Assembly: GCF_000150275.1 (NCBI RefSeq)
Contig: NW_002060966.1
Span: 467,922-531,921, forward strand
Length of the DNA stretch: 64,000 nt
Direction of reading: 5' to 3'
From: Trichoplax adhaerens
Lineage: Eukaryota > Animalia > Placozoa
Shown here: in pieces, positions 14,801 through 41,046 of the stretch
Numbering within the stretch: the stretch's first letter is position 1
Layout of the letters: each line of letters opens with the position of its first letter
Notes under the pieces: generated by a model
Told to the model about the DNA's origin: nothing
Databases searched by the model: none
What the model saw: the letters and a program-made list of their open reading frames with translations, nothing else
Position numbers and translations under genes: made by a program

Positions 14801-15750
14801 GGCAGCAGAATTTATTACATTCATCTAAAGGCATCCATAGTAGCTCAGAGCCATAGAATATCTTATAGATTTATTAGAGTCCTGATGATCATACACACAG
14901 TAAGGTATTAAGTCACTACAGATATTTGGATAAGAATAGTATCGCAACTCATGTATTAGGATATGGTTACTTTATTGTACTTTAACTGCCAAATATGATG
15001 TCTAAGTTAATACTGTGACTATTACCACACTGGATGACAGATTAATCGCTGTAAGATATTATTAGTTACTACCAATAAATTGTAAAATTAGGTAAAATGT
15101 AAATATGCGTATACTGATTATAGCCGCAAATGCTACGAAAAGTATGCAGGTACAAGCAGTCAACTTCGGAATATCCTGGTACTTTCTTTTAGAAGTCTTT
15201 CTACTTATTGTATTAGGCTAGAGTAGATGTGTGCAGATTATCTTTGTATTAGCAATCTAATAAAGTTCTAATTCCCTACAACTTTTTAAATCCCCTAATC
15301 GATTTTATCGAAATAAATTGCGTCATAGCCAATAAGTTCTCGGATAACTACCTATATATTACGATTTCTATGCAAAAGTTACTCTATAACAGATATACGA
15401 CTATACAGTAGAGAATTTCGTTAACGGTTTACTTTAATTTACGCATGTATTTTTCTCGATATGACATAAGGAAAATGAACATGTTTCGCAAGACATAACG
15501 ATATGTATGTTGGGTAGTTAAGCTAGATAGTTCCGTTAATTGTTTAAAATAATGCTATTACTGGATTCGTAAATTGGATTCAATTTGAATTAATACTAAA
15601 GAATAAAATTTTAGATAGTTATCAGTTAGCAAGTGAATTTGAGAATTCTATCTCTGTAACACCTGTATTTGTAATCTACTTAATTAGCTACATAGGATAC
15701 TAAATAAATGTTTTCGTAGTATATACTTCCCATTCAGATATTTTACGTAT

Positions 15751-16041
15751 ATCATTTAGCTGTCTGACCTTACTTGAAAAAATATTACCTAGGAAATTAG
15801 AACAGTTTGAAAAGAATTAACTCCAACGCTACGCTATGACTGGACGCCGGTTAAGAAATTTGAAAGAGAAAATCCGTTCAACGTAGGCGATCAATGCTTT
15901 GAAATGCTCGATACACGCAGCAAAAATAACAAATCTGCGCTTATAATAGAAATTCTAACGGATAAACTAATTGATTGCGGTCTTCGTTCTGTTGCAGAGA
16001 AGTTATATTCAGCAGTATATAGCGATCCAAACAAAAGCTAA
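15751..16041 (+). pseudogene. Death-domain exon, decayed copy 2
   Basis: EIRTV*KELTPTLRYDWTPVKKFERENPFNVGDQCFEMLDTR...IEILTDKLIDCGLRSVAEKL; several stops and a +1 frameshift in an A-run. Confidence 0.75.
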
Positions 16042-19000: not shown

Positions 19001-20715
19001 CTTAAAAAGTACCCTTCTAAAAGGCTCACAACCAGTAGATAGACTATACTATAATCTACAAAATATTGACTATTTTTAGCCAAAATAACAATAATCAGGT
19101 TATCGATATTCTACTATCTTTACAGATAAAAAATACTTGATTATCTATACTACGGTAGACCACTTACATTTTATTATGGTATAACAGTAGATACCTTAGT
19201 AATTTAGCGTCATATGTCTTGCCATCAACACTCAAAGTAAGCTATCTTTAAAGCATCTCTGCAAGTTTTCTTAATAGAATATTATTCATAAATAATATTG
19301 CTAACAATTTTTAGGAAATTTCTGAAATGTGTAATAGTGTCCTTATCACGATACCCGTACTACTGTGAGTAGAATAATGCTGCGATGTAGGTTATCATTT
19401 AATATAGAATTGTACAGCATATTCATTTTTGGATAAGAGTAAACGAATTAGTCAGACACCTAATAATATTTATAAGAAAGCTCAAAGGACAGATTATCTT
19501 CATATCATAGTTTACCTCAAGTTACATTCGTACGCTAACAATTTGTAAAATAGCGCACTAAATTATACTAATTTATATCTAAAATAATAAGGCTAATTTA
19601 GTTTATTAGTGTAACATTGCATGTAAATAGATACTCTGTAGCTGCTCGCGAATCTAGTTAGAAGCTATAAATAAGGGGGGGGGGAGGAAATGTTTTAATA
19701 CAAAGTGTTCTAATTTTCATCTTAGTAAAGATTGGCAGTTGTGCTTAGTCGCCGTTGAAAGCAGTCTCTGTGTTATACTTGGGGTTGTAATAACAAAATA
19801 GTTTAAAAATCATCAATATAGAAATTACTTTTGCCCTTTCAGTAGAAAGTAAATGATGCCAATGATGATAAATTTCAACACATTAGATATTTATATTTTA
19901 AAATAATGATAAAATTTAGAATATTAACCCTTACGTGACATTAGGTTAGTTGTCTTTCTGTTATTCTTAACTGACTTTCATTTAAATCTTTACTACTAAC
20001 TAAAATCATTCTTTTAGTGATTTCTAAACAAGTAAGACTTATCATTTATTTCAGATGGAGAATACAGGTATTTAAAAGTTTATTAATTAATTTAAAGGCA
20101 TGCAGATCAATAATTATCACATTTACTTTATAAATAATTTTTGATAATATATTTCAAGAGGTTAGAGTTAACCTATCATTTTAAATCTATGATGCAGCAT
20201 TAGTTGCAACTGTCAAGACATCATGATTACTGCAAGTCGCTAACTGTAACTTATTCCATTGTGTACAGACTACCACATACATCATAAAAAGCAAGGAGAG
20301 CCTAAATTTTTAAAGCAAGGTTTGATTTCAGGCAGAATTACTTAAAAATTTAGCAAAATATTTGTGCTTCTCTCGCTTAATGCATACTGACGTTACGATA
20401 AAGACTAAAATATTGTTTATATAAAGGAATTAAGTAGAAATAAACTGTTATCAGTGTAGTAACGAAATACGTTCTATTGCAACCAGTGTCATTCAAAAAA
20501 CCTGATATGATGTACTGGATTCGTAAATTAGATTCAATTTGAACGCATATTAGGATGTAAAATTTTTAGTAGTCTTGGTTTAACATTTGAATTTTAAGAA
20601 TTTTACCTCTGTCGCGCATTTATAATGTTATTTGCAATCTGCATAATGCAGTACATAATGATGCCAACAGTAAAAGTTGTCGTAGTGTGAACTTCCTATT
20701 CAGATTATTTAAATG

Positions 20716-21000
20716 TATTATTTAGATGCCAGACCTTATTTGAAAAATACTACAGAAGAAATTGGAACAAATTGGAAATAATTAGCTACGAAGCTGGGCT
20801 ATGACTGGACCGCGGTCCAGAAATTTGAAAAAAATAATCCGTTCAGCGTTGACGATCAATGCTTTGCAATGCTCGATAAACGCTACAAAGATGGCAAATC
20901 TCAAGTTACAGTAGAAATTCTAAAGGAAAAACTTGTTGAATGCGGTCTTCGTTCAGTTGCAGAGAAGCTTTATTCAGAAGTAAATAAAACTAGTAACTAG
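20716..21000 (+). pseudogene. Death-domain exon, copy 3 (least decayed)
   Basis: LDARPYLKNTTEEIGTNWK*LATKLGYDWTAVQKFEKNNPFSVDDQCFAMLDKRYKDGKSQVTVEILKEKLVECGLRSVAEKL. It has the death-domain pattern (IGxxWxxLAxxLG ... Q..ML ... TV..L...L...G...VAE.L) with a single in-frame TAA. Confidence 0.8.
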
Positions 21001-23750
21001 AATTTAATTTGTAAACTAGCTCTTATATTTTGCTATGAATTTGGTTTTCGCTTGGTTATGTTGCACCCTGTCTCTTGTTAATTAATAATTTGGGTCTTTA
21101 TTTGACTTTGCTAGTAATAAATATAATTTACCTCGTAGAAAGTTAGAGTGGATTTCAGTGTTATAGCTCTCATAATAAATGAACGTATGCATGAAAATGC
21201 TATCACCATCAGAAACTAGTTTTGATTCCTTCAATTCGATAAAGAAATCAATTTGAATTATTAACATAAATATGAGAATTACAAAATCGTGAAGTATTTA
21301 TAGTATATTGCATGGACTATTGGTATAGTTAAGCCTAAAATAGGCTGCAACTTTGCGTAATACAATTATAGCTGGATGTGGCACATCTGGAGTTAGGGTA
21401 AGGATAGACTTCACCTATTTATCTTTTCGTGTGCAATGTTTAATAATATGTCGTTGATCGGGACTGTAAGCTAAACATTTGACTGTTAGAACAACATTAT
21501 GATTCAAGGTCAGAAAGTGAACTAATAATGCTTTCATTCATCTATCTAGCAAATCTATCTCGTAGCATGCTACTATTATAATTAAAGATGTATTTCTAAT
21601 GTGTTTGCTACTGTACTGAACTAATTCTACTTCTCAATCTTAACCATAAAATACTTTCGCTCTTATATTTGGTAACATTAATTACCAATATTCGAAATGA
21701 TGCATAGACTTCGATAAAATTGATAGCAGAATAAACCGTAATTCAATACGAGAAATGCTTATTACTGTAATTACTTATAGTCTGAATGAAGTATTGGTGC
21801 GAGTTAATGAACTCCCAAACTTTATGTAGCCATAATCTTTCGTAAAAAACGCATGGAGTCTTACAGATGTCAATGAAAGGCGAATTCTAAGTCTTTCTCA
21901 GACATTTTTTTAAATAAAAATTTTTAAACGCCATAGTTTAGATATTACGATACAAGTTATTTGAGTTCTAAAATGTTTCAATTGCTATTTTTACTTAAAG
22001 AGATGTTTAAAAATGACATACTAGAAACGCTGAAGACAACAATAACGACCATTAATATCATAACTACTTATTCCATATAACTATATCTTACATGATAGCC
22101 ACCAAATCCAATTCGATCCACAATAATTATCCTAAGAGATAGATAAACCGCGTAATTGTTCACGATCTAACATTTAAAAAGTTCCTTGCCTTATAATTGG
22201 AAAATCCTGAACATTTTGAATATTACCTCAATAAATAATTGGATACATAAATCCTCTACTAATTAGTTTCAATTACCTTAAATTTAGCCGAGAAATACAT
22301 AACTATTTCGCAATATCACAAGGCATTGCAGATTTTGGTAAAAGGATTATCGGGGTTCGTACTGGCTGCGACTAATTTTAGTAATTTATCGGCTTTGCTA
22401 AGATAAAATATAAAATAGCAACGTAAGCTTAGATAATTAATAAATTTATTCATAATATTTACAATCTATTAAAAGCAACATTTGCTCGCACGTTCATATT
22501 ACTATATTAAGTAAACCCTTTTAGTATTTAACTTCGTTGCTTAACATCAGCTCACATTCTTGCGTTATTAAGCATGCTAAAAGTTAAGCGTAATTATTTC
22601 CAGAAATCACTCTGCAATGGCTATCTTCAGACAGCAAAATAGAGCGAAATAGGTGTCAATAGACTATTAGCAAACTAACCTTTCTGCAATTTATAGAAGG
22701 AATTAATCTACTGACAAAGAAAGAGAGATCTGCTACTAATAAGATATAAATTATACAGTGATATATCTCGATAACGTAGAGAATGGAAACTAAGGATCAC
22801 GTCAGACGAGATTGCATTGGAATATTCACGCTCTGATAAATCAAGTACATCAAGTCTAGAAAAGAGTACTGTGAAATTATATTATCCGTCTAACAGATTT
22901 ACTAAATACTTTAGTAAATGATGATTGGATACTTATCGGTACCAAGTAATTGTTATACTTTATTCACATTGTATCAATTGAAGTATATCTGCATAATTAG
23001 AAATATAACGTACTTTTATTGAAATAGAAGAATAAATCATCTATTGTAGTTACAATTAATTACATTATTATTATTATCATCCATGGACTTCTACCTGTTA
23101 TTAATTAGTGAGCAAAAAGAATAGTTACAGTTTCCAATCGTGATATATAATACCGTTCTCAAAACACGTGATGTGAAAGAATCCAACTGTTGCACTGATA
23201 AGTATATTTACGGCCTAAAGTTGATAGTTTATCTAGTAGAAAAGATTCCGATAATAACAAGTCTAGACCATTGTAATAGACCTACTGCTACTTCGTTAGG
23301 TTGGTAGTTTAACGATCTTCCGGTCGTAGACAAACTTCGATTCTTAAATAGCGTAGAAACGCCTAACTTTAAAGAATAGTTAACAAACCTTAAGTTACTA
23401 GCACATTTGGGCATAGTCTAGAAGCTGTCAGTCCCAGCTCTCAGAACGTGGTATAAGAGTGAATACTATACCGGTACTTTACTGTTTCATTATCAGCTAC
23501 GGCCACTAACATAAAATATTTTGCGCAAACCATTACAACCATAAAATGATCATTGGTCTTCGAAATCATAGAAAAACGAATAATAACGTTACACAATCCA
23601 AGGTAGTCAAGTAAGACGAAGAGTAACAGAGTATACTCGCACTGCTCTTTGAGGCTCTTTTATTGTTAGAATTAGAGATAGAAGAAATGGTGAAGATTTA
23701 AAACATGGAAAGATAATTTCATTGTTTCATTTAGTGAAAAGTCGTTGGAT

Positions 23751-24770
23751 ATGGCAAGTACAAATAAAATTGATAGCCTTACGCCTTGTGATAGCCAATC
23801 TAAGGAGAAAAAATCCATCATGGAGGACCTTAGAAACTTAATTACGACTGGTGGAAATGAACAGCAACAAAACAACTACGAACAGGCTTTAATAACCTAT
23901 AACGAAGCTTTAGATCGAATTAATTTCGTAACGATGGTCGAAGACAAGGACGAGAATGAATATTATCATGGTCTTTATTTAGAAATCTATCGAGAAATGG
24001 TTAAAATTTACAAGAAACTACTTCGTTATGAAGATATCCTGTGGATTTATCAAAAAATGTTAAAAGTGCAAATTGAAGTATCCGGAGAAAAAAGTCAAGA
24101 TGTAGCTAAAATCTATGAAAAGATTGCGTATGGTTATGATAGTCTCAATCAAACCCATAAAGCTATTGCCATGTTTGAGAAACATCTACATATTAAATTA
24201 GAATTATATGGCGAAAATAGCCATGAAGCTGCTGATGCTTATTTTGATGTTGGATTAGAGTATGAGCGCCAATCACATCATTATAAAAGTTTGTCTATGC
24301 TTAAAAAATCATTACGGATTAAAATAAACCTTCTTGGAGGGGAGCACTACGATCTTGCCAGTATCTATAGTATGATTGGCGATATATATACTGATCAAGA
24401 TAAATTTAAGGAAGCAATCGCCATGTACGAAGTCTGTTTAACTCTTGAAGTACGTCAATATGGAGATAACCATCTTTGTATTTCAAATCGTTATAACTCT
24501 ATTGCATGGGCTTATCAATGCCAAGACCGATACAATGATGCATTGGGCTTGTATCAGAAATCATTAAATATAGTTGTTGAATTATTTGACGAAAATGATG
24601 ATCATATCCTCGAAATCCAAGAGCAAATTGCTTTAATCTCTAAAGAACAACATCAGCAAAAAAATTCTAAATTGATACCACAAGATAATCTTCAGAGCAA
24701 TGAAGATGCCGCAACAGTAAATGAAATTATAATCAAGGAAGGTGATCAATCAGTAGGTAATGCTCATTAG
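23751..24770 (+). CDS. Intronless TPR-repeat protein (42-aa kinesin-light-chain/nephrocystin-3-type repeats), ~339 aa
   Basis: ORF with repeated KSL.IK..L.G..H.D.A..Y..IG motifs; first ATG at 23751. Confidence 0.88.
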   Translation: MASTNKIDSLTPCDSQSKEKKSIMEDLRNLITTGGNEQQQNNYEQALITYNEALDRINFVTMVEDKDENEYYHGLYLEIYREMVKIYKKLLRYEDILWIYQKMLKVQIEVSGEKSQDVAKIYEKIAYGYDSLNQTHKAIAMFEKHLHIKLELYGENSHEAADAYFDVGLEYERQSHHYKSLSMLKKSLRIKINLLGGEHYDLASIYSMIGDIYTDQDKFKEAIAMYEVCLTLEVRQYGDNHLCISNRYNSIAWAYQCQDRYNDALGLYQKSLNIVVELFDENDDHILEIQEQIALISKEQHQQKNSKLIPQDNLQSNEDAATVNEIIIKEGDQSVGNAH

Positions 24771-25650
24771 CCAAAAAAAATATTCATTTAGTCTTATCTT
24801 ATCGATTTTATTTATACCAATTCTTAGCCGATTTAGAATTTATAAATATATATTCCTTACTATAGTTACCTGTTCTTGAAATTTCGTTATTGGTTTCGGT
24901 TCTATCTCACTTTAATTGCGGTTATCACGATATCAGAGGCGATTCTTAATGTAAATTTAATCCAATTGAGATTAGGTATATAAATCAGTTCTGATAAAGC
25001 ACCGATGATAATTATGAATTTAACATAACGCTAATTAATCATAGTTACAAAATCTATTCACTAGCTCTATTAATGGCTACGATATTTCTTGAATGAAGCA
25101 CTTGAAATTGTCGTATTACAGTCAAATCAATCATTTTGACTATAAAATCATACACATTAAACAAGAAAAAATTAGCCAATCATAAAATTGCTACATAATG
25201 TTTGGTAAGCTTTAAATTGCAGTATAATCAGCTTGATTTAAATTAGTTTTCGTTTACTACTGTCTCGCTTATGATTGGAGTAATTCCAGCTATCATGCGC
25301 TGTAATCTAATGTGAAGTCAACTTCTTATTCTAAATGGGTAGTTTCTACAGTACAGTAGTTAATACGGTTGAAATTTCACTTGCCAGATAGCGAATGGGG
25401 CGCTGCTCATGCTTACAAAGTTTGAGAAGTTTGATTTTTAAATGAAATTGATATCGTCAAATTTTCTGAATCATCAGCACTAATTAAACTAGTAGAATTT
25501 CAATTCTATCATTTACTTGTATTTCTACAGCCATTAGCTTGTGTATATGATAGTGAAATAAAAATTGACTAAGTGCTAGTAAATAGATACGCGTATTCTG
25601 TATATAAAATTATCGCTGAAATACTAACAACTAAACCAAATTTGATGTAG

Positions 25651-28600
25651 TTTATAATTTGGAAAAAGAAGAAAGTACAAATGATGGTCGTTATGAAAGC
25701 CCAGTGGCTAAAAATGTACCTTTTAATTCTTTTAAAGCTAAAATTAATCCAGCCGAAAAGCAAGCCGGTAAGATATTTCATGTCTCTAGTTTGGATCTAC
25801 CAGTGTTCCAAGGTAATACTGACCGAATTATCAATATAGTTTGCAGTGCCATGATGTAGGTTATTACATTATTATTTTTCCTAGTATTAGAGAAAATTTG
25901 CATAACCTATATTCATATTCCTAATAGGGAAAAATATTCTTACAAGATCGAGTCATTTATTACCTGAAGATGATCATAGTATGAATGACAACCGATTACA
26001 AAAGGCGACTAGCTTACAGGATAACGTACCAAATCCTAATAAGCAACCAAATAAATTAAAGAAAGTTAATATTATCAATTCAAGGATTTATATTGTTGAC
26101 GAGTTACAGGAAAAAATATCGAAAGGAGGCCTGAATCGCTCCGAAGAGAATGAGAGCAACTCTAGCTTACCAACTAGTAAATCGGATTCCGAAATTAGCA
26201 CTAAAATTTTAATACCCGAAAGTAATTATGACACTCCAGGGCAAAATAAGTCTATTAGCGTAATAGATCCCAAGTACGATAATTCAGTATTTGATAGCAT
26301 TGTTAAAACTGAATTCAAAGACTTGGAGAAATCTGAAACTAAGCTGTTTTTACCTGAGAACAGACCCTATCCGCCGATCAGACAGCCTCGCCGTAAGATG
26401 AACAGTCATCCAGCAAGTACTAATTTAACTACTAATACAATAAACCTATCTAGTCACAGCGATGATAGGCATTCAATAGCTGTAAATTTCAGTGAAGTAA
26501 GGAGTCAATCATGCATTGAAGAACTACAAAATGATAGTAATCAGTCTATGAAAAAATCATCAAGCTGTCCAAACACAAGTATGAATAAGAGTCCTACTAG
26601 TCAGAAGAAATCCAAATTTAAACCAGACGATTTTTGGCTTAGTAGAAACCTCGCTACATCGAATGAAGATAGCGTAGCAAAGTCTAGGAATAATACTATG
26701 AATAAGTCTCCAACGGAGAATAAATTTAATAATAGATTAAATCTAGAGCAGCAAAATAATTATCAAAATGTCAACACATACAATCAATCAAATCTTAAAC
26801 CTAGCCAAATTCGTGGAAAGGCCTCACAGCAGAGTGACCCTGAAAGTTCTTCTCATGATAACATTCAGCAATTAAATGGGAAAAACACATTGTCTAATAG
26901 CCAAAGTAATCGATCTCCCAGTAAAACATGGCAAGCTAGCAAGAGTAATCAGATCATCGAAACTACAAGCAAAAATGACTGGAGCCATCCATTACAAAAG
27001 GAAATTACTAATCCATCATCTACTAAGAAGAAAGTCGTTAGTACTCAGTCTAAGCTAGATAACCGATCTTTAATAAGCAACCCATCGAACGAAGAGAAGT
27101 CCGTTTCGATTGAATTACCTGTTCTAGACTACACTAAGTATTCTCAGGAAATCAAATCCAAGCGGAATAATAGCTCTGGACGCCAACATGATAGCAATAC
27201 TTTGATGAAGCACAAATTCCAAGCATCTTCAACAAATAATGACACGTTTGATAAGAATAGACATCAGCAGAAAAATAATGTGAAATTTAGAAAGGGTTCG
27301 ACATCAAGCAGTACTGAATTTCCAGATGAAGGTATTATTTGGCAGAAAAATACGAACAAGATTTCGTCAGAAAAGAAAGCGCAATGTGCTAGTCCTGAAT
27401 CTCCTAATGAAGTTCAATCCAAACATAAAATAAAGCTAACGTCAGGCATTAAATCTAATGAAACAGACTTTAAAGTTCAAGTAGAAAGCAACCAACAGCA
27501 ACAAGATTATAAATCATTCAATTCTGTAAATAGATGTAAATCAAATAGCTCATCATTTCAGAACGATGGCGGACCAATTCCTAAAAGTAATACAGGAATC
27601 TTGTCTACCGACTTAAAGCAAAAAGATAGTGCTAAACCAACCTCAGCGAACCACTCGAAATTAATTAATTCTAGAATAGGAAATGATGGTAAACCTATAA
27701 TTAAAAGTAAACCTAAATTGGGTCCTGGCGCCAATTCAGTAATGCGAAATAAAGGTAGCAGTTTATTTCCTAAAGATTCTTTCAAATCAACTCATACTGA
27801 GCCTAGCCAAAGCAACGAGAGGCCAACTGAAAATAATTCCAAATCTTCAGTGAATAATGATGGTCATGATTCATGGCCCCGAAATACGTACCTATCCAGA
27901 TCAAGGAGTTCTGATGTTGTCCACCTAGATAAATATTCGTCTGATGATATAATCAAGCTTACTTCTAGTTCTCCCCAGCAGAAACTAAATTTTTATATAA
28001 GCGAATCAGAAGCGAACCTTTCCGTGACGGGAGATGTTTGTAAATTGGATGATAAATCGGAGACCTCACCACAGGACGACGTTAATATCGTAATAAATCA
28101 AAGTAAAAATCGCAGAATGCATCATACTATTCAGATTACGAAAAAATACTCAAAGCAAGAACAACTTGATCAAGTGAGTAAGGTAAATTCTGATGTACCT
28201 AAAGGAATTAAAATACAAGATAATTTTTGCGACCCTTCGACTCTGGTATCAACCGTTGCAGCGAATAAAAGTCGCGACCAAAACCGTAAAGAACTTACGC
28301 GTATGCCAGAAAATCAGCTAAGAGAAAGACAAAATATGGGAAACGAAATTCCAGCCCATCAATTCAAGCAAGTGAATTTACAAGAAAATAAGAATGCACA
28401 ACAATCCAAGGCTCAATTTGGCAGCAATCAGGACCATTCTCAGCAAAATCAACTACCAAATCAATTCAATGATAAAGAATCTTTAGGCTGGCAAAATACG
28501 AACCATAACTATACTCCTGAATACCGGTCTGTTGAAATGCAACAGTTTGACATACAGCATGCTCAAAATTCTAAAACGATGTCTCATAAAGCCTCTATTA

Positions 28601-31600
28601 CTGGCAAGAAAGGAAGTGCATATTCTAATTCCCAAGTTCGCTCATTCAGTGCTAAAAATAATTACCATGGACAAAATAACAATAATGGGGATCAAGCCGA
28701 ATTTCTAGTTAGTAGGCAATTAAATCAATCGAAATTAGAAGGTCAGTATAACTATTATAAAATGATAGTAGCATTTCCTACAAAATACAACAGCAATATA
28801 CTGATTGTAATGATCATGTTCTAGACACTAAGGATAAGCCCGTAATTAAAAAGAGCATCAGTGTCCAGAATGAGCATAGCGGAAAATCAGGTAATAATTC
28901 ATCTAAAGCTCAACAAGATGTTACTGGGCAAGAAAAGAATATTAATAATGACATCAATCGTTCGCGTAATATTTTGATAACTGACACAGATACACAAATA
29001 GTAGCATATAGGCCAGAATTACCACAAAAAATGCAAGTAATAGCATCATCTCCAGGTAAGTCTTTAGGTAATCAAGAGTGAGATACGTCGTAACTTAAAA
29101 TCATTGCCAATTTCATTTCAGTAATCTATCCATACATTTATCTCTATCGAAGTAGGAGATTCGGCTGTTTCAGCCCAAATAGTGTAATTTCTATAATTAA
29201 TCTAATTTATTTACGTACTTTTCTCTTTGTAGTGTTATGTTTTCATATCAGATTTACACGGACTATTTAGCAAAACTTATAAACTAATCTTATCACTTCT
29301 ATAGAATTGATTTAACTGTACAATCTGAAGATTTTAAGTATACGGTAGCTAATTATAACTATTGCTAAAATATCTCACATGTTAATATTTCATTAGATCA
29401 CGATGAGTATCCTGAGCTATCGGCTACATTCGAATTAGTACCTAATAAAGTCTTCTATTTCGAAAACAGTAAAATTTCTGGCCTACGAATTACATTTCCA
29501 GCTCAGGAAAGATCTAATAAAATCCGAACTCGCATGGTTATTCATTATGCTGATCCTCCATATTCCAATGAATTAAAGGATCAGTCGATCATTCAGTTAT
29601 CTTCAATCATTAAATTAGATAGCTATGATGCCAATCGTGGTTATAAACCTTCCATACTCTTACGATTACCAATTCCTTTGGCAACAAGAATTCTTGAAAT
29701 ATATAAAATTGACTCTGTGCAAGCATTACCGGTGAAGGTTTTATATCGTATTAGCGAGTATTTTCCTACGTGGGAAAAGCTAAATATAGACTACCAGTAT
29801 TGCTTTGAGAATCAAGGTGGTCACTGCATAACAATTCCAATCTATCGTACTGGATATTACGTTCTTGGATACCAATATCAATCAGATAGTTTCAATTCAA
29901 ACTCATATCATAGTCTATATTATGTCTTTCCAAGTCTACAACAAGAAGTTAACGTCTTAGCAGTTCTTTCTGCTATTCAATCACAGTCTGATCATGTTCA
30001 TTTAAAATTTTTTGTGATCCGTAAGGGAGAAAACTCACAAAGTATAATTGACAAAATAGCACCACCCTACCGGGAGACTTTATTACAACATACTGGACTT
30101 GAGTATGCCATTCTAAGCAATGGCAGATATAAAATGAATTTCTTACCAAAAGATATTACCTGCGAAGATAGATTTCAAGATAAAAACATAACCGTAAATT
30201 GGAGCCTTCGCCATTATATTTGTATCGATATTCAATGTCAGGTTATTAATCGTGACAAATTGAATAATTTGTGTGTAATAAAGTTAGAAAGATTGGATGA
30301 GAGTCATGACATTCTGGAATGTTATCAACTATGGTTAGTAAAATGAAGGCTTTCCTGTAATCTTAAAGATACATTTACACAGATTTTACTTGTCGCAAAT
30401 CTTGAGCTGATTCCAATCTTCCCTCAATGCAATTTTAATGAGCTCTGCCACCTTTCTTTTTCAGCCTAAGCTTTCAGATCATCGCTCTAAAAAGTTGTCT
30501 AGAACTAGACGAAAACGACTACAACAGTCAATACTAGTACAAAGTAAGTACCAGTACCTTAATTAGTAATTATTGGATAGGTAATCTGTATCAGGTAGTG
30601 CAATAGCCGAAAAAGGCGTGGTATGTTGATGCTATAAGTCATATATAGTCATATTCTAGTAGAATTAAGAGTAAATTAAACTGTCAGTTGAATACGATGA
30701 CTGACTACCGTACTCTTTCTTGATTTCAGATTTCTTAGATAATTCAGTAAAGCTTATCAAAACTGTAAAATTTATTGTAAACTGCTGCATTAATCGAAAT
30801 ACAAAGATATCTTAATATCTTCGGTGAAGATATTAAACTACTGCTTTATTTATTTTGCTACTTGTAGAAATCGCTGAAAATTTAACAGACACTTCTGAAG
30901 ATGAATTTGGTGAGTGTATCATTTTAAGTCAGATCTTAAATCTAAAGCTACGTAATTTAAATCCTATTGAAACATCGCTTCTGAAATATCAATTATACTG
31001 GTGACCTGACACTACTCTTAAAAATTTATGATAAAACACTTCTCAAGATTAAATCATTGTTTATATTAGCGATAATTATTCTATCCTTAATAGCTAAATA
31101 CTCGAATATAATATGTTAGAGAAACTCATGATATCCGTGATATAATAAGGGGAAAAATAGAATAATTATAGTAGCGACTTGACACCGCTCTTCAAAATTT
31201 ACTAAATAATTCTCAATATTAAATTACTGTTTATTTATAGCGTTAAATTTTCTAACATTAAAATAATTGTTCGAATACATAATTTTTAAAAAGATATCGT
31301 ATCATAGCAAGGGAAAATTGAAGCTACTATAGTAGCGAATTAGCGTCACTCTTCCAGACTTGCTTTAATAGTTCTAACGATTAAATTATCTTTACAGATG
31401 AAGATAATTATTTCTATCTTCGATAAAACATTCTCAAATGCACAATTTAAAAGAAGCATTATATTAAAATAAGTGCCTATAAGGACTATATTGCAAAACA
31501 TGTGGTACAAGATTTATCATACATTAAAAGACATTCTATTGCGTCTACCAGATCACTTTTACTTTAGGACAAGTGACAATAAATACAATCGATATTAAGA

Positions 31601-32134
31601 TAAAATTTTTATTCTAGCAGTAAATTAAAAGCAGACTTGGATATTAGCCAGATCTTTTAAACTGACTCCTGATTTAGCTGTAATATAATAAACCATATCA
31701 TGGTTATAATTTATCCATGTTAATTTGAAGTTAAAAATTTATTGGCTTCGAATTCAATTCATATCGAAAATGTAATTGTATATAATGTCTATTTTTCTCT
31801 GCTCTTAATAGCTCATAGGAAATTAGAAATGAGCTTGGACATCATTCGAGTCATAAATAAGCATTTGAAAATTATTTTGGAATCCATTCCATTGCTTGAA
31901 TTAATATATGATCTAAGAATAGATCGTGTACTTAGCGATGATAATGTCGTCTATTTGAAAGAAATTCGAGGCCAGAAAGAGAGAAATTATGCCTTTATTT
32001 TACTTTTGCAGCAACGGCAAGATCGCGATTTTTACAAATTTTGCAAATTATTGCAAGAACATCAGGTTAAATCCCTTAATAAACTAGGCATGCTATTAGA
32101 AGCAGAAGCCCGAAACAGAGACACTATCGATTAA
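25651..32134 (+). CDS. Large protein: disordered S/N/K/Q-rich N-terminus + ZU5-like/UPA-like module + C-terminal CARD
   Basis: Phase-compatible exons 25651-25767, 25928-28741, 28825-29055, 29397-30337, 30465-30543, 30868-30909 and 31812-32134. A possible first coding exon 25395-25419 (MGRCSCLQ) would give ~1523 aa. Exon 29397-30337 has ZU5-like motifs (GLRITFPA, LSSIIKLD, ILLRLPIP, VKVLY...TWEKL). The last exon has a CARD-like pattern (IINKHLKIILESI...LIYDL...VLSDDNV..LKE...ERNYAFILLLQQR..RDFYKFCKLLQE). Confidence 0.72.
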
Positions 32135-33857
32135 ACCCTCTCAAACTGTACAAATGGAATGCTTTAACAAAAAAATATAATCAGCTGCCTTTGTAAGTAA
32201 AAGCGTATTGCTCAATTCAAAAAATTGTAATAATTTTAAAGTAAATGATCCTTCCTGGTGCAACAGTATCTGTTGGAGTTCTATGATATCATAAACTTTA
32301 ACAAATTGATTTTATGCTACAATTACTCATCCAAAGAATGATACTGCGATATAATAACATTTAACCGTTTTATAAGAATTCGCTGATTTAAATAGAGGAT
32401 AAAAAGGGCAACGTTGTGTAACTACAAATCAAAACGTGAATTGTATTTTTATAGCAAATCACTATATCTATGTGCATGTTGATAGCGACTATCGGTTGCT
32501 GATATCAGAAATGGCTTAATGTAAGTAAATTGTATTTAATTGTGTTATGTTAGCACTTTATTATTAATTAATAGGCATATAAATATTAGCCAAGTGCCAA
32601 GATTGATAAATTATACTTAACTATTTTTGTAAAGATATACGAAATGATAGCTTGCTTTTATGCTCTGTGAATCTTCAATTAAGATTTAGAAAAGATTCTT
32701 CCCCATGGTATATAATTTGCAACCAACAACAATTTCAAATTTCTATTAAAATTAAAATCATTTACTGCAGAATGATATAAAATAACTTAGTTTGAGCAGG
32801 TAAAGATCGAACAGGAAGTAGTTGATAAGTACTAATTTCGAATCGGATTAAATGTCTGCATCTTAGCTTAGTTAATATTTATTTCAATTTTTGTTATAGT
32901 TTAAATACAGAAAATTGCAGACACTCTTTTAGAAGCATACTTCGATATCTGGCCAAAAGTTTACGATAAATTAACTAGGAAAATATTGGATCAAAACATA
33001 TTTTCTAGTATTTCTAGCTTAAAGCTCAAGAAGCGATAATTTAATCCATAGAGTCTATAGCTCACAATCTAATCAAATTAAACCTTTGAGGTATGGAATA
33101 TTTGCACGATTGCATATTTCCTGTTCCTTTACAAATGCAAAAGCAAATCAATAGATTAGTCATGGCAGAATCCACATTTCTGCATCATGCAGCCTTTATG
33201 TACAGTTTTCCTGTAGACTACTATAAAAAGTGATAGCAGTACTTACTGCGCGATGATTATTAGTTATCGTCGGTAGTATGAGTAAAGAAAGATATTGAAA
33301 GTTAGCTTATAGTGCAATCTGACAGTAAAGGAAATATGAATGTTATTATCCACTGAAAGATTTGCTTGAACAGCAGCTGTAAGATAAGCGATCACTTGAT
33401 AGGAGAATACTGTAAGCATATATGCATTTATTGCATGTATGATTGACAAACGTAATTAAACAAGCAAATTATGCGCGAATATTAGCCTAACTGGATGACA
33501 AAGTAAAGGAAATATTCTATTAAAATAAAAAATTTTACCATTCATCTCTAGTTAGTGGATAATGATCTATTCAGCTCAAAAAGGTGAGTGATCGAAGATA
33601 AGACTTAATACGCCAGGATTAAGCTGCTTATCATTCATTCTAACTAATCCTGCTTCCAGTCAACGCTATACTATACAGAAAAGTAAATTCAGTTTATCGA
33701 TAACATTCTGTTCACATTCAAAGAATACTATTGTCAATTAATCAAGTCGCAAAATATACAAATATGCAAATATAGTCTAAGTCAGTGAGAGTTATTATTA
33801 ATGTATGGTAAAGCAAAATAGTGTATCAATTGCTTAATCCCATGCAACCCACCCACA

Positions 33858-33907
33858 NNNNNNNNNNNNNNNNNNNNNNNNNNNNNNNNNNNNNNNNNNN
33901 NNNNNNN
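33858..33907. other. Assembly gap (50 N)
   Basis: Run of 50 n characters. Confidence 1.
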
Positions 33908-35964
33908 TTTTTGATTGCTATATATCATATTACAAAAAGTATTTCTAAGAGGATAATGTTCGTTAGTCAGCGATCTGATAGTTACTGAACCTCTGTTAAA
34001 TGAGCACATTATCGTAAACCGTCAGTAAAGCGACGGGGAGTTTGCACTAGTCTTTTTTAACTGCATACCAGAAAGGAAGCTGTTGTGGCCTGAAATTAAT
34101 TTTAATTTAATGACATTTCAAGTAGACTATAAGAGGGTATGAAACAGATCTAAGCTTTTGGGAGGGATAGTATCAGTTGACTAAATATGAGTTAATTGAG
34201 AAAAAATTTAGCTTTGCTGAAGTTCAGCTAAAGAATCCAAGTGTTGCATTGTAGAATTTGCAGAATGACATAAATAGCCTTACTTACAATATATCGGCTA
34301 TATATTAGCTACTCAAGTCTACGCAAATATAGACCAAGTATTGAAGAGTTTTCATTAAGGTGCGTCAAAGCAAGATTTCGTACTAAAAACCTAACCTTTT
34401 CCAACTGCATACAGAAAAGGAGGCTGTTGTAGATTTGCATTGATTTTCACCTACTGTTTACTTTTAGTCACCTGGCATTATCAAATATCAATCGAAGACT
34501 TTAATTCATTTAACCGAACAACCGAGATCTTATAGAAGACAAGATTATCTCGTTAAAGCCATGGGATTGCATTATCATAACAATTAATTGAAGTAGTCAT
34601 GACTATATGAGCAAGTATCGTACGTTGATGATAAGTATAAGGAAAAAGCTTTTCTGTTATGTCCATGGACGATACTTAATATTTGTATAGACCTAATGTG
34701 ATTGCTTCATGGCTAATTATAATTATGAGACGAAGGAAAGGAATTGTGGTCATTAAGGTTCACTGTTAGAAAGGAAATCAATTGTGATTCAAAATGACGA
34801 TAATCAATAGCTGCTAATGCTGACAAGCCGCTTCATTCCAATTTTTTCAAACAACATCTGAACTCTACTTGTGCAGTTGCGAGTATCTAGTCGATAAACT
34901 TGAGTCCAGTTTTTCCGACTTGAACTCAGTAACAAATTTGAAGGTGAGTAAATAATAATTAATTTCATTACAGATTGAATCAAGGTCGATTCTTCTTTAC
35001 TGAACTCATCAACTAAGCATGGCAGTTATTGGCTATATGCAAGAGCTTTATGATCAATATAGAAAATGCACTATTACGTCAATGACTAAAATTTTAACTC
35101 AGTAATTGACTAAATTTTCTAATCGTATATACCATACGGTATGTCTGTCATCAAGTTCGAATTAGTAAGTTACGTCTGAGTGACATGCATTAAATTCAAT
35201 CTAATATGCTAGAAATTGGGTAAGTTAGTGGTTGTTTGAGCATTCTTTACCCTGTAGTCTATAATTTTAAAAGTGAATTTTTTGGTCTTCCATTATTAGT
35301 ATTCATACTTCATATTTTACTTAATTGCCTGCACTGCAATCACACTAATACTCATAATTATGTTCAGAAGCAGTAATGTGTTAATTTTTATGATTAATAA
35401 AGTATCAGGAAGAACTGATCAATTCTTATCAGAAGAATTATAATTTGCACGATAGGTAGAAGATGTAAAGTTTCACCTTAGCTTAACAATTAGATTATTC
35501 TAACAACTTTGAAATATTTCCAATTTCTACCGTATCATATCTTCAACAGTTACTTTATTAGCAAGGTGAATATTTACCGTTATGGTAACTTGCAGTGTTT
35601 TCTACAATTACCAACTATAAGTCGTTAATGACAAATAATAAAGTTGTCAAATTAGGCAGCTAGCCGTCAGCCTTATATTCACCTTCTGTTCTGTCTCATG
35701 GAAGGTTGTCGAGTGGCATATTCTATTTCCTTCACAGTCATCCATCCTAGATTAATTCTTTATAGCTAACGACAACAGGCTAATCAAGCTATTTCAGTGG
35801 AAGTTATAATACATACCTTGACACATTTAACTAAGTGAGATTTTATTAGATATGTAAGAGATATTTTATTACACGCAAAACTTGACTTTATTTTACTTTG
35901 TTTTGCTAACTTTAAATCTTATTGCACTATTTCTTCAAAGACTTCAATACTCCAGTAATTGCAA

Positions 35965-38295
35965 ATGGATATAATTGGTAAGTAAAATTAAATTACACTA
36001 AAATGAATCAGTAAATTTCCATCATAATAAGCGATAGTTGAGTAAAAAATTTATAAATTAAAATAAATTAAACCTGCTATCATAAATCTTATATGGTCTA
36101 TACTATGTAATCATTACTGGTGTAGATGTGTTTATTAGTTTTAACAGCACAAAGTATGATCAAGCAGAGTGTATAAAAGAGATTTTAGAAAATAGATTTC
36201 CAAACTTAAAAATAAGAATGCACGAAAATCAAGTGCTTTCCGGAGATAATTTGACCCTAGAAAAGGATTATAACATCTGTTCCGCCAAGGTACTTTTAAC
36301 AATGATTGATTAGAAAACTTGCATTAATGATAAAGGTCTGTTAAGATTTCCAATTAACCCTAAAAAGATAACCAAACAGAAGAAAACATAGGTTGATCAG
36401 GCTATCTTTTATCATTCTTATCCATATTTCTATAGCAGTGATATTGAATAACGAATAATGGTTCGAGGTATCGGTGATTCATAAGACTATTTTCTATACT
36501 TGATGCTTGTAGATATTCATATGTTGTTTAAGTCAAGATTATGCAGACTCAGTATGCTGCTGTAAGGAACTGGAGCGGGCATTTGAACTGGCTAAGCCGA
36601 TTATACCAGTTTTATTGGAAAATTTCGATATCGAAAACGGACTAACCAATAATCTGACAAGGCAAAACTTATTCCCATATATCTGTGGCAGAAGATCTTT
36701 CAACCTAATTTATAATCAAGGTTTCAATAGCTATTCCCTATCTGAAAATATGCTGCATCTTCTAGATTCATTAAAATCATGGGTAAGAATTACGTAATTT
36801 ACTAGCCCAATATCAGGTTAAAAGTTTTTGAAAATTAATTTAGGATATATATCATATAAATAATAATAGAAATGGATATACCATGATTTATGATATATTC
36901 AATATGAGTTTATTCATATAATATTCAATGTCGTGAGTTTATTCGCATTGCCTAGAAGAAATGTTTAAGAAGGCCAAGTTTATAATCTAGGTTGTAGGAA
37001 GTAATGACAGAATTTCAGCCATGAACCAACATTCAAGCGCTTCTATTCACGACTCGGGCAATGGTAAATATTGTTTGTGTAAATGAATGAAAAGATATTT
37101 TTCCAAAGTAAAAATATTTCAATTTATTGTAGGATTAATAAGCGTAGGAATGAGCTTATAGTTTGTGCGATCTGGAATGATACAAAAATTTAACTAAATT
37201 ATTTGATGGATAACTTTTGTTATTAGTAAATCACATCCAATAAAGTGATTGACGCCTATGTTATGATCGATGATATGAATACGTAAAAATATAATTATTT
37301 CAGCTTTTCATGAGCAAAGTAAATCTTCTAGGATTATTACTAAAAGCAAATACCGTAGATATAATTGTAAACAATTTCATTAAATTGATACAGTTTCACG
37401 AGAGATCACAGCATTCTAGCATAAACATACTTTTGGCTCTTAGTATATCAACAATGACATTTATATATTTATGTTTTTGCTGTTTAAATATAATGAACTC
37501 AAATGCGTCATCTCAAATACAAGCTTAGCAACATTTGTTTATTTTCTAATTTCACTTGATCAGACAGTCTGATAGTTTCTTATATATTATTTATCCTCAG
37601 CTAAAATAGAAAATTTTAGCTACGGTTTCTGACCAGCAAAATAAGTGCTTATAAAAAATATTTTTGAAATTGTTGTGATTTATCAAATTTATGAGCTTTA
37701 GCTAGTAACTTATTACTAGGTGCGATTTCATAATTTTAATATCATTTGTATTAGCTGCAACAGTGGAAGTACAGCAAAGCTGTGAGATGGATCCAAGGGC
37801 TGATCAAGGTTTGACGAACATACTTTTCTGCAATGACTACGCTGCATGCAGATTAGGCGTAATGTTTTTATATTAATCGCAAATAAGCTAATGAAAATCT
37901 AGATAAGATATAAACTGTTAAAGCAATTATATACCATGACAACGTATAATAATGTTCGTTATAAAATAGTAGAATTACATCAGTTCATCAAAATAATGCA
38001 GAATTATGCAAGCGATAGAATTTCATGATTTAGGTGGATTGGATACTTTTTAATAAATGCGTTTGTCATATATGCTAATGCTATGTGGCGAGGGTTATTT
38101 GAAGTTATTTTTAGCTAAAACCAGTTTAATTATAGTACAATCCTTTTCAAGGCGTCTTTAAATAAAATTCGTTTAATATCATTGATATTCATATAATTTC
38201 AAAAATTCATTTTTATGTATTTAGCCGCCAATCCGGTCTCCAAGTTATGGTCCAGCCTACTAGACAAAATTAGTCAATTTTTGCCGGGATATTAG
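35965..38295 (+). CDS. TIR-only protein (TIR_2-type), ~214 aa
   Basis: Exons 35965-35977, 36126-36289, 36513-36782, 36991-37063, 37755-37808 and 38225-38295 splice in frame: MDIIDVFISFNS...IFICCLSQDYADSVCCCKELERAFELAKPIIPVLLE... The DVFIS, S..Y..S..C..EL and IIPV motifs are TIR hallmarks. Likely non-coding 5' exon ending ~34943 (AAG|GTGAGT). The last three exons are less certain. Confidence 0.85.
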
Positions 38296-39996: not shown

Positions 39997-41046
39997 ATTC
40001 GAATGAGGGCAGACCCTAACTCAGGATACGCTTCGTACTTAAAGTGTACACAGGTAAGGTATCCTGTAGTGTAGAAACAGGCCTTGGTTCGAGAGTCGTG
40101 AAGGATTTAACTCGGGACTTGAAGGAGAGAAATTTTCATTTTTACATGGATAACTTCTTCACGAGTACCGAGTTATTTCTGGAGCGACCATCTAAGGGGG
40201 TATATTGCTGCGGAACTGCCAGGCAAAACCGTAAAGGTTGGCCTCGAGAATTGCGTGGTAATAGAATCGTGAAGAAGCGAGGTGATAGTAAAAGTTTACA
40301 GTGCGGTACACTAGCAGCCTCAATTTGGTATGATAATAAACAAGTTCGTTCCTTGTTTATTACATGCACGAATCCATAAGCGTCAACGATAAAACTTAAA
40401 CGCAAATCTGGTGATTCAATTGAGGTCGCTAGTCCATCAGTTGTACCTCATTATGTAAAGTTTATGGGAGGTGTGGGATAGGACTGATCAACTCAGAGCT
40501 GCCTATCCTACCAGGAGAAAGTCCAGAAAGTGATGGAAGTACCTTTTCTGGTTTTTATTAGATCAATCGATTGTAAATACATTCGTCTGCTTGTTGCAAT
40601 CTGCTGATCACTGAAGGACAACGAGATCAGGGAAACACCGAAGGCGAGGACCGAAGCAGTTTCGAACGAAACTAGTGAAGCTACTAATTTCGACTTTCCT
40701 AGGGAGTCGAAAGCGTCTTTTTGATTCAAATAGGTTTGAAGACAATGATATACACTTGGTAGTGCCATCGAAGAAACCTCGTAGATGTCATTGCGGCGCG
40801 AAGAAGTTCAAATAAAGAAAGCAAACAAAATTGGAATGCGACTCGTGCAAGGTAAACTAGGATGAACTCTTCAACGTAACATAACATATATATAAGCGAT
40901 TAATAAATCGTCATCTATTTATCTCTTCATCAAATTAGATTGGCTTGTGTGCTGAATGCTTCAAGCCATACCATGAAGAACTGAAGAGGATGCGAATGAC
41001 TTTAGCTAAAGGCTGTAGCCACTGGGATAGTACTAGTTTAATTTAA
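39997..41046 (+). mobile_element. piggyBac (PGBD-like) transposase pseudogene, C-terminal half, with an intron
   Basis: IRMRADPNSGY.../VYTGK...GLGSRVVKDL...YMDNFFTS...CGTARQNRKG...WYDNKQV...MGGV(D)RTDQ...WKYLFWFLLD...C-terminal CDSCK|IGLCAECFKPYH. Contains frameshifts and stops, and is more GC-rich than its flanks. Confidence 0.9.

What the first reader, a model, noticed from the sequence alone, without database searches (positions are those of the whole stretch)
25395..32134. CARD8-like architecture (giant disordered N-terminus + ZU5/UPA-like + CARD) in an early-branching animal
Seen: separate ORFs in the track join through phase-compatible GT-AG splices into one ~1,520-aa protein. It has ~1,000 aa of S/N/K/Q-rich disorder (mostly one 2.8-kb exon), a ~310-aa ZU5-then-UPA-like beta module, and a terminal CARD. 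Established: disordered region + FIIND (ZU5-UPA) + CARD is the layout of the vertebrate inflammasome sensor CARD8, and PIDD1/UNC5/ankyrin use ZU5-UPA-death domain. Inference: this may be an independently assembled or ancient caspase-recruiting sensor, with the long disordered arm acting as a protease/degradation tripwire. At the ZU5 end the sequence reads IYRTGYYVLG, with Gly where PIDD/CARD8 have the autoproteolytic Ser (HFS/SFS). It may therefore be non-self-cleaving, like UNC5.
Basis: partly seen in the sequence, partly recalled or inferred. Interest (0 to 1): 0.8.

Follow-up and report, generated by a model that had tools for sequence, protein, structure and literature searches.

The report
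Placozoan ZU5-UPA-CARD gene, non-cleaving
This stretch of the Trichoplax adhaerens genome encodes a long disordered region followed by a ZU5-UPA module and a CARD, the same layout as the vertebrate inflammasome sensors CARD8 and NLRP1. It appears to have been assembled independently from placozoan parts, it lacks the self-cleavage site, and its function is untested.

Summary
The exons at 25981-32134 join through GT-AG introns in compatible phases (4377 nt, 1459 aa from the ATG at 25981).

- **Long exon.** The 2.8-kb exon is a unique, non-repetitive S/N/K/Q-rich open frame.
- **ZU5-UPA.** The 313-aa exon has no Pfam hit, but its AlphaFold model (pLDDT 82.5) is a ZU5 followed by a UPA. It matches ankyrin ZU5 (Z 10.6), CARD8 UPA (Z 9.6), and by Foldseek ankyrin-B, UNC5b and the NLRP1 FIIND.
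- **CARD.** The last exon folds as a CARD (pLDDT 92; Apaf-1 CARD at rmsd 1.7 Å).
- **Cleavage site.** Where paralogs carry HFS, this gene reads R-T-G, so canonical autoproteolysis is unlikely.

- It belongs to a placozoan family of at least 17 ZU5-UPA exons, usually arranged TPR → ZU5-UPA → Death domain. This is the only copy followed closely by a CARD.
- Its CARD groups with the N-terminal CARDs of placozoan NB-ARC genes, which points to exon shuffling rather than CARD8 orthology.
- H1 lacks one base near 30326 that H2 has. The CARD stays in frame in H1 only through a weaker donor.

An earlier report of this scan noted the TPR-ZU5-UPA(-Death) family elsewhere in this genome. No transcript data were available.

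The parts
23546..23610 (+). Putative first coding exon of the public H2 model (start codon, 21 codons plus 2 nt; donor GTAAGA)
   Evidence: The N-terminal peptide of P0001 maps here. Inclusion in this gene rests on the H2 MAKER model only.
23735..24755 (+). TPR exon (TPR_12/TPR_10 repeats). The donor GTAATG lies 13 nt before the in-frame stop at 24768-24770. Phase-1 exit.
   Evidence: Pfam TPR_12 E 1.9e-31. Identical to P0001 residues 26-362. A TPR array lies upstream of ZU5-UPA on the same strand at 5 or more paralog loci.
25395..25419 (+). Unsupported alternative 5' end.
   Evidence: Phase-compatible with the acceptor at 25651, but not used by P0001.
25651..25767 (+). Small exon (117 nt, symmetric phase 1-1)
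   Evidence: Identical to P0001 residues 364-401. No Pfam hit.
25928..28741 (+). Giant low-complexity exon (2814 nt, symmetric phase 1-1), S/N/K/Q-rich, predicted disordered. Contains an internal ATG at 25981.
   Evidence: 947-aa ORF. Composition. Unique in the genome, no tandem repeats. The H1/H2 difference is 4 substitutions, of which 1 is non-synonymous.
28825..29055 (+). Exon continuing the polar linker (231 nt, symmetric phase 1-1)
   Evidence: Splice sites and phase. Identical to P0001 residues 1341-1416.
29397..30337 (+). ZU5-UPA exon (313 codons from 29399). ZU5 is about 29408-29875 and UPA about 29933-30337.
   Evidence: AF2 model pLDDT 82.5, pTM 0.77. Foldseek: 4d8o E 2.8e-9, 3g5b 7.5e-8, 7crw_A 3.7e-5. 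VIA: 3f59_A Z 10.6 over residues 4-159; 7jn7_C Z 9.6 and 7crv_B Z 9.4 over residues 164/179-313.
29846..29854 (+). R150-T151-G152, at the position of the HFS/SFS autoproteolytic motif of PIDD, NLRP1 and CARD8
   Evidence: Alignment A1: paralogs read HFS (6 of 16) or HFC (2) in these columns. The motif lies between strands 142-148 and 152-159 of the model.
30326..30339 (+). End of the ZU5-UPA exon, with two candidate donors (GTTAGT at 30334, GTAAAA at 30338) and a 1-nt H1/H2 indel
   Evidence: H2 has an extra T after window 30326 and its model uses GTTAGT. In H1 only GTAAAA keeps the frame.
30465..30543 (+). UPA-CARD linker exon 1 (79 nt) with a basic cluster (R/K-rich, RRKR)
   Evidence: Phases. 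Identical to P0001 residues 1730-1755.
30868..30909 (+). UPA-CARD linker exon 2 (42 nt, acidic)
   Evidence: Phases. Identical to P0001 residues 1757-1769.
31812..32134 (+). CARD exon (106 codons plus the stop at 32132-32134)
   Evidence: Pfam CARD 15.9 bits, E 0.013, below the cut-off. Paralog exons at 33-42% identity pass the cut-off with 45.1, 33.7 and 25.2 bits. AF2 pLDDT 92.1, six helices with helix 1 broken. Apaf-1 CARD TM 0.78/0.88, rmsd 1.7 Å. Profile against PDB: ICEBERG E 0.004, CED-3 E 0.007.

Best explanation
The locus is one multi-exon Trichoplax adhaerens gene, the H1 counterpart of TrispH2_009717. It is a divergent member of a placozoan expansion of TPR / ZU5-UPA / death-fold proteins. 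Two things have happened in this member. The usual C-terminal Death domain is replaced by a CARD of the type at the N-terminus of the placozoan Apaf-1-like NB-ARC genes. About 1050 aa of unique polar, low-complexity sequence, carried on three symmetric phase-1 exons, lies between the TPR array and the ZU5. These points are shown: the domain identities, the splice-phase compatibility, the family context and the loss of the HFS site. The rest is inferred. Because the ZU5 autoprocessing site is R-T-G rather than H/S-F-S, the protein most likely stays as one uncleaved chain. It would then work like the non-cleaving ZU5-UPA-death-fold supramodules of UNC5 and ankyrin. In that model ZU5-UPA holds the death-fold domain in a closed state until a partner binds the TPR or the linker. 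The freed CARD would then engage CARD-bearing partners by homotypic interaction. Candidate partners are the Apaf-1-like NB-ARC proteins and the two CARD-caspases that Kamm et al. 2019 report for Trichoplax sp. H2. The resemblance to CARD8 and NLRP1 is convergent domain shuffling, not orthology.
For: - **Gene structure.** All junctions are GT-AG and in phase. Every exon is intact in H1 and 99-100% identical to the 1876-aa H2 model. That model came from an evidence-based MAKER pipeline (PMC6057997).
- **ZU5-UPA.** Supported, by a weak profile hit to ankyrin-2 ZU5 as the only PDB hit, by a paralog passing Pfam ZU5 (26 bits), and by ESM Atlas neighbours that are ZU5, UPA and FIIND clusters.
- **CARD.** Supported.
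- **Family.** There are 17 further ZU5-UPA matches in the genome. Only 17 hits appear among 1.84 billion representative proteins, and those named are from Trichoplax. TPR → module → Death on one strand recurs.
- **CARD origin.** The nearest CARD exons are followed by NB-ARC P-loop exons.
- **HFS loss.** The motif's requirement is documented in PMC3210808.
- **CARD partners.** CARD-bearing partners exist in placozoans (PMC6321704).
Against: - No transcript evidence could be examined, so the fusion of the TPR exons and the use of the long introns (895 nt and 902 nt) rest on a gene prediction.
- In the H1 sequence the stronger donor GTTAGT at 30334 would shift the frame and end the protein in the next exon, before the CARD. 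The in-frame model needs the weaker GTAAAA donor, or a 1-nt assembly error or polymorphism in H1.
- No ortholog outside Trichoplax H1/H2 was found.
- The closed-scaffold mechanism is an analogy with UNC5b and ankyrin. No ZU5-UPA-CARD model was folded.
- Window-level Pfam scores for ZU5, UPA, FIIND and CARD are all below threshold.
Confidence: 0.6

Rival explanations
1. CARD8/NLRP1-type tripwire. The long disordered arm is a bait for pathogen proteases or for degradation. Its destruction by the proteasome releases an active UPA-CARD fragment that polymerises and activates caspases.
For: The order of a disordered region, ZU5-UPA and a CARD matches CARD8. The UPA half matches the CARD8 and NLRP1 UPA best (Z 9.6 and 9.4). 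About half of the paralogs keep HFS or HFC and could self-cleave.
Against: Functional degradation needs a pre-cut chain. Here the P1 Phe is Thr and the P1' Ser is Gly. In CARD8 and NLRP1, Ser-to-Ala abolishes cleavage and Phe-to-His cripples it (PMC3210808). There is no sequence-level FIIND signal. A TPR array probably precedes the disordered region.
Confidence: 0.08
2. Gene-model artefact or decaying copy. The exons belong to two or more transcription units (for example a TPR gene ending at the stop at 24770 and a separate downstream gene). Alternatively, in H1 the transcript uses the GTTAGT donor and encodes a truncated, CARD-less protein.
For: - The TPR ORF has its own stop 13 nt after the proposed donor.
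- The introns of 895 and 902 nt are long compared with the other introns of this model.
- The H1/H2 1-nt indel makes the stronger donor frame-breaking in H1.
- The H2 paper warns that TPR-rich genes give deviating gene models (PMC6057997).
- An earlier follow-up in this genome found worn copies of the same family (s1-741765).
Against: - All nine exons are open and 99-100% identical between H1 and H2, with mostly synonymous change in the giant exon.
- Phases agree at every junction.
- TPR → ZU5-UPA adjacency on one strand recurs at several paralog loci and in independent gene models of H1 and H2 (P0007/P0018).
- The CARD exon has no start of its own, begins in phase 1 after an AG, and ends in a stop.
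Confidence: 0.22
3. Ancient orthology. The gene descends from a ZU5-UPA-CARD (FIIND-CARD) gene already present in the first animals and is a true relative of CARD8/NLRP1.
For: Same domain order. Fold matches to the NLRP1 and CARD8 FIIND. A chordate FIIND cluster is among the ESM Atlas neighbours (score 0.90).
Against: The ZU5 half matches ankyrin ZU5 better than FIIND. All sequence-detectable relatives are placozoan paralogs with Death domains. The CARD's closest kin are placozoan NB-ARC CARDs. In the papers read, FIIND-CARD is reported only for human and fish NLRPs (PMC11508797).
Confidence: 0.05

Closest known systems
CARD8 (vertebrate inflammasome sensor: disordered N-terminus, FIIND = ZU5-UPA, CARD)
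   Same: Same order of a disordered region, ZU5, UPA, a short linker and a C-terminal CARD. The UPA half superposes on CARD8 UPA (7jn7_C, Z 9.6, rmsd 3.0 Å over 116 residues).
   Different: The autoprocessing site is R-T-G instead of S-F-S. There is no Pfam FIIND signal. The disordered part is about 6 times longer and is probably preceded by TPR repeats. The parts come from placozoan families. DPP8/9 control is unknown.
NLRP1 C-terminal half (LRR, FIIND, CARD)
   Same: A repeat array, then ZU5-UPA, then a CARD. The rat NLRP1 FIIND matches the whole module (7crw_A, Foldseek E 3.7e-5, Z 9.8).
   Different: TPR instead of LRR. There is no NACHT or PYD within the H2 gene model, and no ORF of 70 aa or more in the 13 kb upstream. 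No self-cleavage motif.
UNC5B and ankyrin ZU5-UPA-Death domain supramodules (non-cleaving)
   Same: Best overall fold matches (4d8o E 2.8e-9, Z 12.5; 3g5b E 7.5e-8; ankyrin ZU5 3f59_A Z 10.6). There is no nucleophile at the ZU5 end, so the same uncleaved, possibly auto-inhibited mode is expected.
   Different: The death-fold domain is a CARD, not a Death domain. There is no netrin-receptor ectodomain and there are no ANK repeats.
PIDD1 (LRR, ZU5, ZU5, UPA, Death domain; HFS autoprocessing)
   Same: The placozoan paralogs (TPR, ZU5-UPA, Death; HFS kept in about half) resemble PIDD1 in logic: a repeat sensor, a self-cleaving ZU5, UPA and a death-fold domain.
   Different: A single ZU5, TPR instead of LRR, and in this member a CARD and no HFS.
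Placozoan TPR-ZU5-UPA(-Death) family (e.g. TRIADDRAFT_54879, TRIADDRAFT_54880, TRIADDRAFT_52770; annotated 'uncharacterized', 'Death domain-containing' or 'Nephrocystin-3')
   Same: True sequence homology (E 5e-38 to 1e-26 within the genome). The module is a single exon, and TPR lies upstream.
   Different: It is the only member with a CARD within 2 kb downstream and the only one with the giant low-complexity insert. It is a long orphan branch with 31% maximum identity.

Membership tests
ZU5 domain (Pfam PF00791) | Sequence match to the family HMM above the gathering score | tested here: not met
   No hit at E <= 1 for the window exon. Paralog model P0002 passes (26 bits against a cut-off of 21), and it is homologous to the window exon at E 5.9e-66.
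ZU5 domain (Pfam PF00791) | ZU5 beta-sandwich fold | tested here: met
   Model residues 4-159 against ankyrin ZU5 3f59_A: Z 10.6, rmsd 2.7 Å, 124 aligned. Predicted model, pLDDT 82.5.
UPA domain | UPA beta fold directly after the ZU5 | tested here: met
   Residues 179-311 against CARD8 UPA 7jn7_C: Z 9.6, rmsd 3.0 Å, 116 of 127 aligned. rNLRP1 7crv_B: Z 9.4. Whole-module matches to 4d8o, 3g5b and 7crw_A.
FIIND (NLRP1/CARD8; Pfam PF13553/PF23679) | Sequence match to the FIIND HMMs | tested here: not met
   No Pfam hit for the window exon or for any of five paralog exons and eight paralog proteins scanned.
FIIND (NLRP1/CARD8; Pfam PF13553/PF23679) | S/H-F-S autoproteolytic motif at the end of the ZU5 (Ser nucleophile, buried Phe) | tested here: not met
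   R150-T151-G152 aligns with HFS of the paralogs on the loop before the last ZU5 strand. The requirement is documented in PMC3210808.
FIIND (NLRP1/CARD8; Pfam PF13553/PF23679) | Autoprocessing into non-covalently bound N and C fragments; restraint by DPP8/9 | not testable with these tools
   Needs protein expression and biochemistry.
CARD (Pfam PF00619) | Sequence match above the gathering score | tested here: not met
   15.9 bits against a cut-off of 23.9, E 0.013. Paralog exons at 33-42% identity pass with 45.1, 33.7 and 25.2 bits.
CARD (Pfam PF00619) | Six-helix death fold with a broken helix 1 that matches CARDs rather than DD, DED or PYD | tested here: met
   Model pLDDT 92.1 with helices 8-16/18-24, 27-36, 42-49, 54-66, 70-81 and 86-100. 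Almost all top Foldseek matches are CARDs, apart from a few designed proteins (Apaf-1 TM 0.78/0.88, rmsd 1.7 Å; NOD1, CARD8, CED-4).
CARD (Pfam PF00619) | Homotypic binding to a caspase or adaptor CARD | not testable with these tools
   Needs a binding or filament assay.
Placozoan TPR-ZU5-UPA-death-fold family | Significant sequence homology of the single-exon module | tested here: met
   E 5e-38 to 2e-26 to 11 other loci in the same genome. Alignment A1.
Placozoan TPR-ZU5-UPA-death-fold family | TPR array upstream on the same strand | tested here: met
   TPR exon at 23735-24755. The same arrangement occurs at C1414:12.663-12.669 Mb, C1412:7.770-7.774 Mb, C1414:12.558-12.561 Mb, C1295 and C1404. 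Whether it lies in one transcript here was not tested.

The most novel reading that the evidence does not exclude
The gene is a working caspase-recruiting death platform of a placozoan, and the roughly 1000-aa disordered arm serves as a protease or degradation tripwire. Release of UPA-CARD would be achieved by some non-canonical cut, for example at the basic RRKR cluster in the UPA-CARD linker or by a trans-acting protease. The HFS-bearing TPR-ZU5-UPA-Death paralogs would be self-cleaving sensors. Together these would mean that inflammasome/PIDDosome-like 'functional degradation' sensing exists in one of the simplest animals.
Probability: 0.08. Interest if true: 0.85.

Novelty: new variant of a known kind. 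Interest (0 to 1): 0.55.

Why it matters
In the literature read here, ZU5-UPA followed by a CARD is described only for vertebrate NLRP1 and CARD8 (PMC3210808, PMC11508797). Those papers were not an exhaustive survey. A placozoan gene with the same layout, built from lineage-specific parts, would show that this death-fold supramodule was assembled more than once by exon shuffling.

The locus also offers a natural comparison. It is a non-cleaving R-T-G member alongside HFS-bearing paralogs, which can be used to ask what autoproteolysis adds to ZU5-UPA signalling. The public annotation records only TPR for this protein ('hypothetical protein') and lists its paralogs as uncharacterised. The placozoan immune-gene survey that was read does not mention ZU5 or FIIND (PMC6321704). 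The family is therefore effectively undescribed.

Tried and rejected
- **Direct Pfam scans.** Scans of the three main exons gave nothing for the middle exon and only a sub-threshold CARD.
- **PDB sequence searches.** phmmer with single exons found nothing useful. The paralog profile gave only ankyrin-2 ZU5 at E 0.15.
- **Word-indexed protein searches.** The ZU5-UPA exon, the CARD exon and P0001 residues 1400-1876 found no further relatives and no transcript-derived fragments that could confirm the junctions.
- **NB-ARC or NACHT upstream.** I looked for one, which would have made the gene NLRP1-like. There is no ORF of 70 aa or more in 10000-23745 and no called gene in the 6 kb upstream in H2.
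- **H1/H2 divergence.** At 99.55% identity it is too low to separate exons from introns.
- **Tree of the module.** It is star-like and places the window copy on a long orphan branch with no supported partner.
- **Rejected readings.** Repeat or transposon origin of the giant exon.
- Exons were searched one by one by reference, and the public protein P0001 was used by its id.


Full report
**Source.** The window is G000:C1391:467922-531921 of a 105.6-Mb, 1414-contig, roughly 31% GC assembly. Proteins encoded on its contigs of 13,260,704 and 9,661,127 bp carry TRIADDRAFT names. The genome is therefore Trichoplax adhaerens (H1), a placozoan, and 'early-branching animal' is correct.

**Observation.** I rebuilt the exon chain from the sequence. 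The exons are 25981-28741, 28825-29055, 29397-30337, 30465-30543, 30868-30909 and 31812-32134. All donors are GT, all acceptors are AG, the phases agree at each junction, and the sum is 4377 nt (1459 codons) ending in a stop.

The giant exon (25928-28741 from its acceptor) is open for 937 codons. It is S/N/K/Q-rich (45% of residues) and 76% polar or charged. It is unique in the genome and has no tandem repeats. The string IYRTGYYVLG is present.

Each exon was searched by reference.

**Middle exon.** It has no Pfam hit and no PDB sequence hit. An exhaustive HMMER scan of 1.84 billion representatives returned only 17 proteins. The own genome holds 17 further matches, each essentially a single exon of about 330 codons.

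An alignment of 16 members (A1) supported an AlphaFold model with mean pLDDT 82.5 and pTM 0.77.
- Foldseek against the PDB returned, at probability 1.00, ankyrin-B ZU5-ZU5-UPA-DD (4d8o, E 2.8e-9), UNC5b ZU5-UPA-DD (3g5b, 7.5e-8) and the rat NLRP1 FIIND (7crw_A, 3.7e-5). CARD8 (7jn7_B) scored E 0.01.
- Domain-wise alignment gave residues 4-159 = ankyrin ZU5 (3f59_A: Z 10.6, rmsd 2.7 Å, 124 residues). Residues 179-311 = CARD8 UPA (7jn7_C: Z 9.6, rmsd 3.0 Å, 116 of 127). rNLRP1 UPA gave Z 9.4.

Weaker independent pointers agree. The paralog profile's only PDB hit is ankyrin-2 ZU5 (E 0.15). One paralog model passes Pfam ZU5. The nearest ESM Atlas clusters are ZU5, UPA and FIIND families. The ZU5-then-UPA reading is supported.

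**Last exon.** Pfam CARD scores 15.9 bits, below the 23.9 cut-off. The genome contains at least 61 related exons, and several at 33-42% identity pass the cut-off with 45.1, 33.7 and 25.2 bits. The family profile finds ICEBERG and CED-3 CARDs in the PDB.

The model (pLDDT 92.1) has six helices with the broken first helix typical of CARDs. Its structural neighbours are almost all CARDs, led by Apaf-1 (TM 0.78/0.88, rmsd 1.7 Å).

The nearest paralogous CARD exons are followed within about 1 kb by NB-ARC P-loop exons. They are the N-terminal CARDs of the expanded Apaf-1-like genes described by Kamm et al. 2019 (PMC6321704).

**Autoprocessing site.** In A1 the paralogs read H-F-S (6 of 16) or H-F-C (2) where this gene reads R150-T151-G152 (numbering). 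In the model this tripeptide lies between strands 142-148 and 152-159, just before the last long ZU5 strand. That is where D'Osualdo et al. place the SF/S and HF/S cleavage sites of CARD8, NLRP1 and PIDD. In their work Ser-to-Ala abolishes cleavage and Phe-to-His cripples it (PMC3210808). Both residues are absent here, so canonical autoproteolysis is unlikely.

**Family context.** Gene models and six-frame mapping of paralog loci show a recurrent same-strand order of TPR array → ZU5-UPA → Death domain. Examples are C1414:12.663-12.669 Mb and C1295, with TPR → module at C1412:7.770-7.774 Mb and C1414:12.558-12.561 Mb. One variant is Death → module → Death.

The window gene is the only module with a CARD close downstream. 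It is a long orphan branch in the family tree. This family is annotated only as 'uncharacterized', 'Death domain-containing' or 'Nephrocystin-3'. An earlier follow-up of this scan had already noted a TPR-ZU5-UPA(-Death) family elsewhere in this genome, and my own results agree.

**Gene boundaries.** The only full-length public relative is TrispH2_009717 of Trichoplax sp. H2 (1876 aa, 'hypothetical protein'). It uses every exon above. It also has a start exon at window 23546-23610, the TPR exon 23735-24755 (its donor lies 13 nt before the ORF's stop) and exon 25651-25767.

All introns from the TPR exon to the ZU5 exon are phase 1. The three intervening exons (117, 2814 and 231 nt) are multiples of three, so any of them could be skipped without breaking the frame. 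This follows from my arithmetic.

The H2 models came from an evidence-based MAKER run (PMC6057997). I could not check transcript support for this particular gene.

**A caveat specific to this window.** H1 and H2 are 99.55% identical here. However, H2 has one extra T after window 30326. In H2 the exon ends at the strong donor GTTAGT. In H1 that donor would shift the frame and stop translation in the next exon, before the CARD. This could be an H1 assembly error, a real polymorphism, or a truncating change in H1.

**Interpretation.** The best reading is a single gene encoding (TPR-) long disordered linker - ZU5-UPA - basic/acidic linker - CARD. It was assembled within placozoans from a TPR-ZU5-UPA-Death family and an Apaf-1-type CARD exon. 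It resembles CARD8 and NLRP1 by convergence.

Because it lacks the nucleophile, I expect it to act as an uncleaved adaptor in the manner of UNC5 and ankyrin supramodules. Opening would expose the CARD to the placozoan CARD network. That mechanism is inference.

The CARD8-type tripwire is unlikely (0.08). A gene-model artefact or an H1-truncated product remains a real possibility (0.22). Ancient orthology with FIIND-CARD is unlikely (0.05).

**Novelty.** I rate it a new variant of a known kind. The folds and the supramodule logic are known. The CARD version outside vertebrates, the TPR context and the giant insert were not described in the papers I could read.

Noticed in passing
window 30326-30339 vs L027 12781-12795: There is a single-base difference between T. 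adhaerens (H1) and Trichoplax sp. H2 at the end of the ZU5-UPA exon. It changes which of two donors 4 nt apart keeps the reading frame.
   Followed up: yes
window 30465-30543: The UPA-CARD linker exon carries a dense basic cluster (K/R-rich with RRKR). It could be a nuclear localisation signal or a protease-sensitive site. The next mini-exon (30868-30909) is acidic.
   Followed up: no
window 25651-29055: The three exons between the TPR exon and the ZU5-UPA exon are all symmetric phase 1-1 (117, 2814 and 231 nt). A short isoform lacking the disordered arm is therefore frame-compatible.
   Followed up: partly
own genome, e.g. C1414:12662992-12669339, C1412:7757000-7774000, C1295 (L009): Paralog loci show TPR → ZU5-UPA → Death on one strand. 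About half of the modules keep an HFS or HFC motif and may self-cleave like PIDD. Public names are only 'uncharacterized', 'Death domain-containing' or 'Nephrocystin-3'.
   Followed up: partly
own genome C1385:92859-211236 and C1404:1696788-1812287: There are dense clusters of CARD exons. The CARD exons checked (three on C1385, one on C1411) are followed by NB-ARC P-loop exons, consistent with the expanded Apaf-1-like family reported by Kamm et al. 2019.
   Followed up: partly
window about 35965-38295 (L027 18438-19017 in H2): A small stand-alone TIR_2-domain gene lies downstream on the same strand.
   Followed up: no
window 40044-40379: An ORF fragment matches the piggyBac-type transposase family DDE_Tnp_1_7 (E 2.8e-18) in a locally GC-richer stretch (0.37).
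   Followed up: partly
window about 33700-33990: There is a run of N (a scaffold gap). The sequence just before it is poorly aligned with H2 and has many small indels, so quality is probably low at the gap edge.
   Followed up: no
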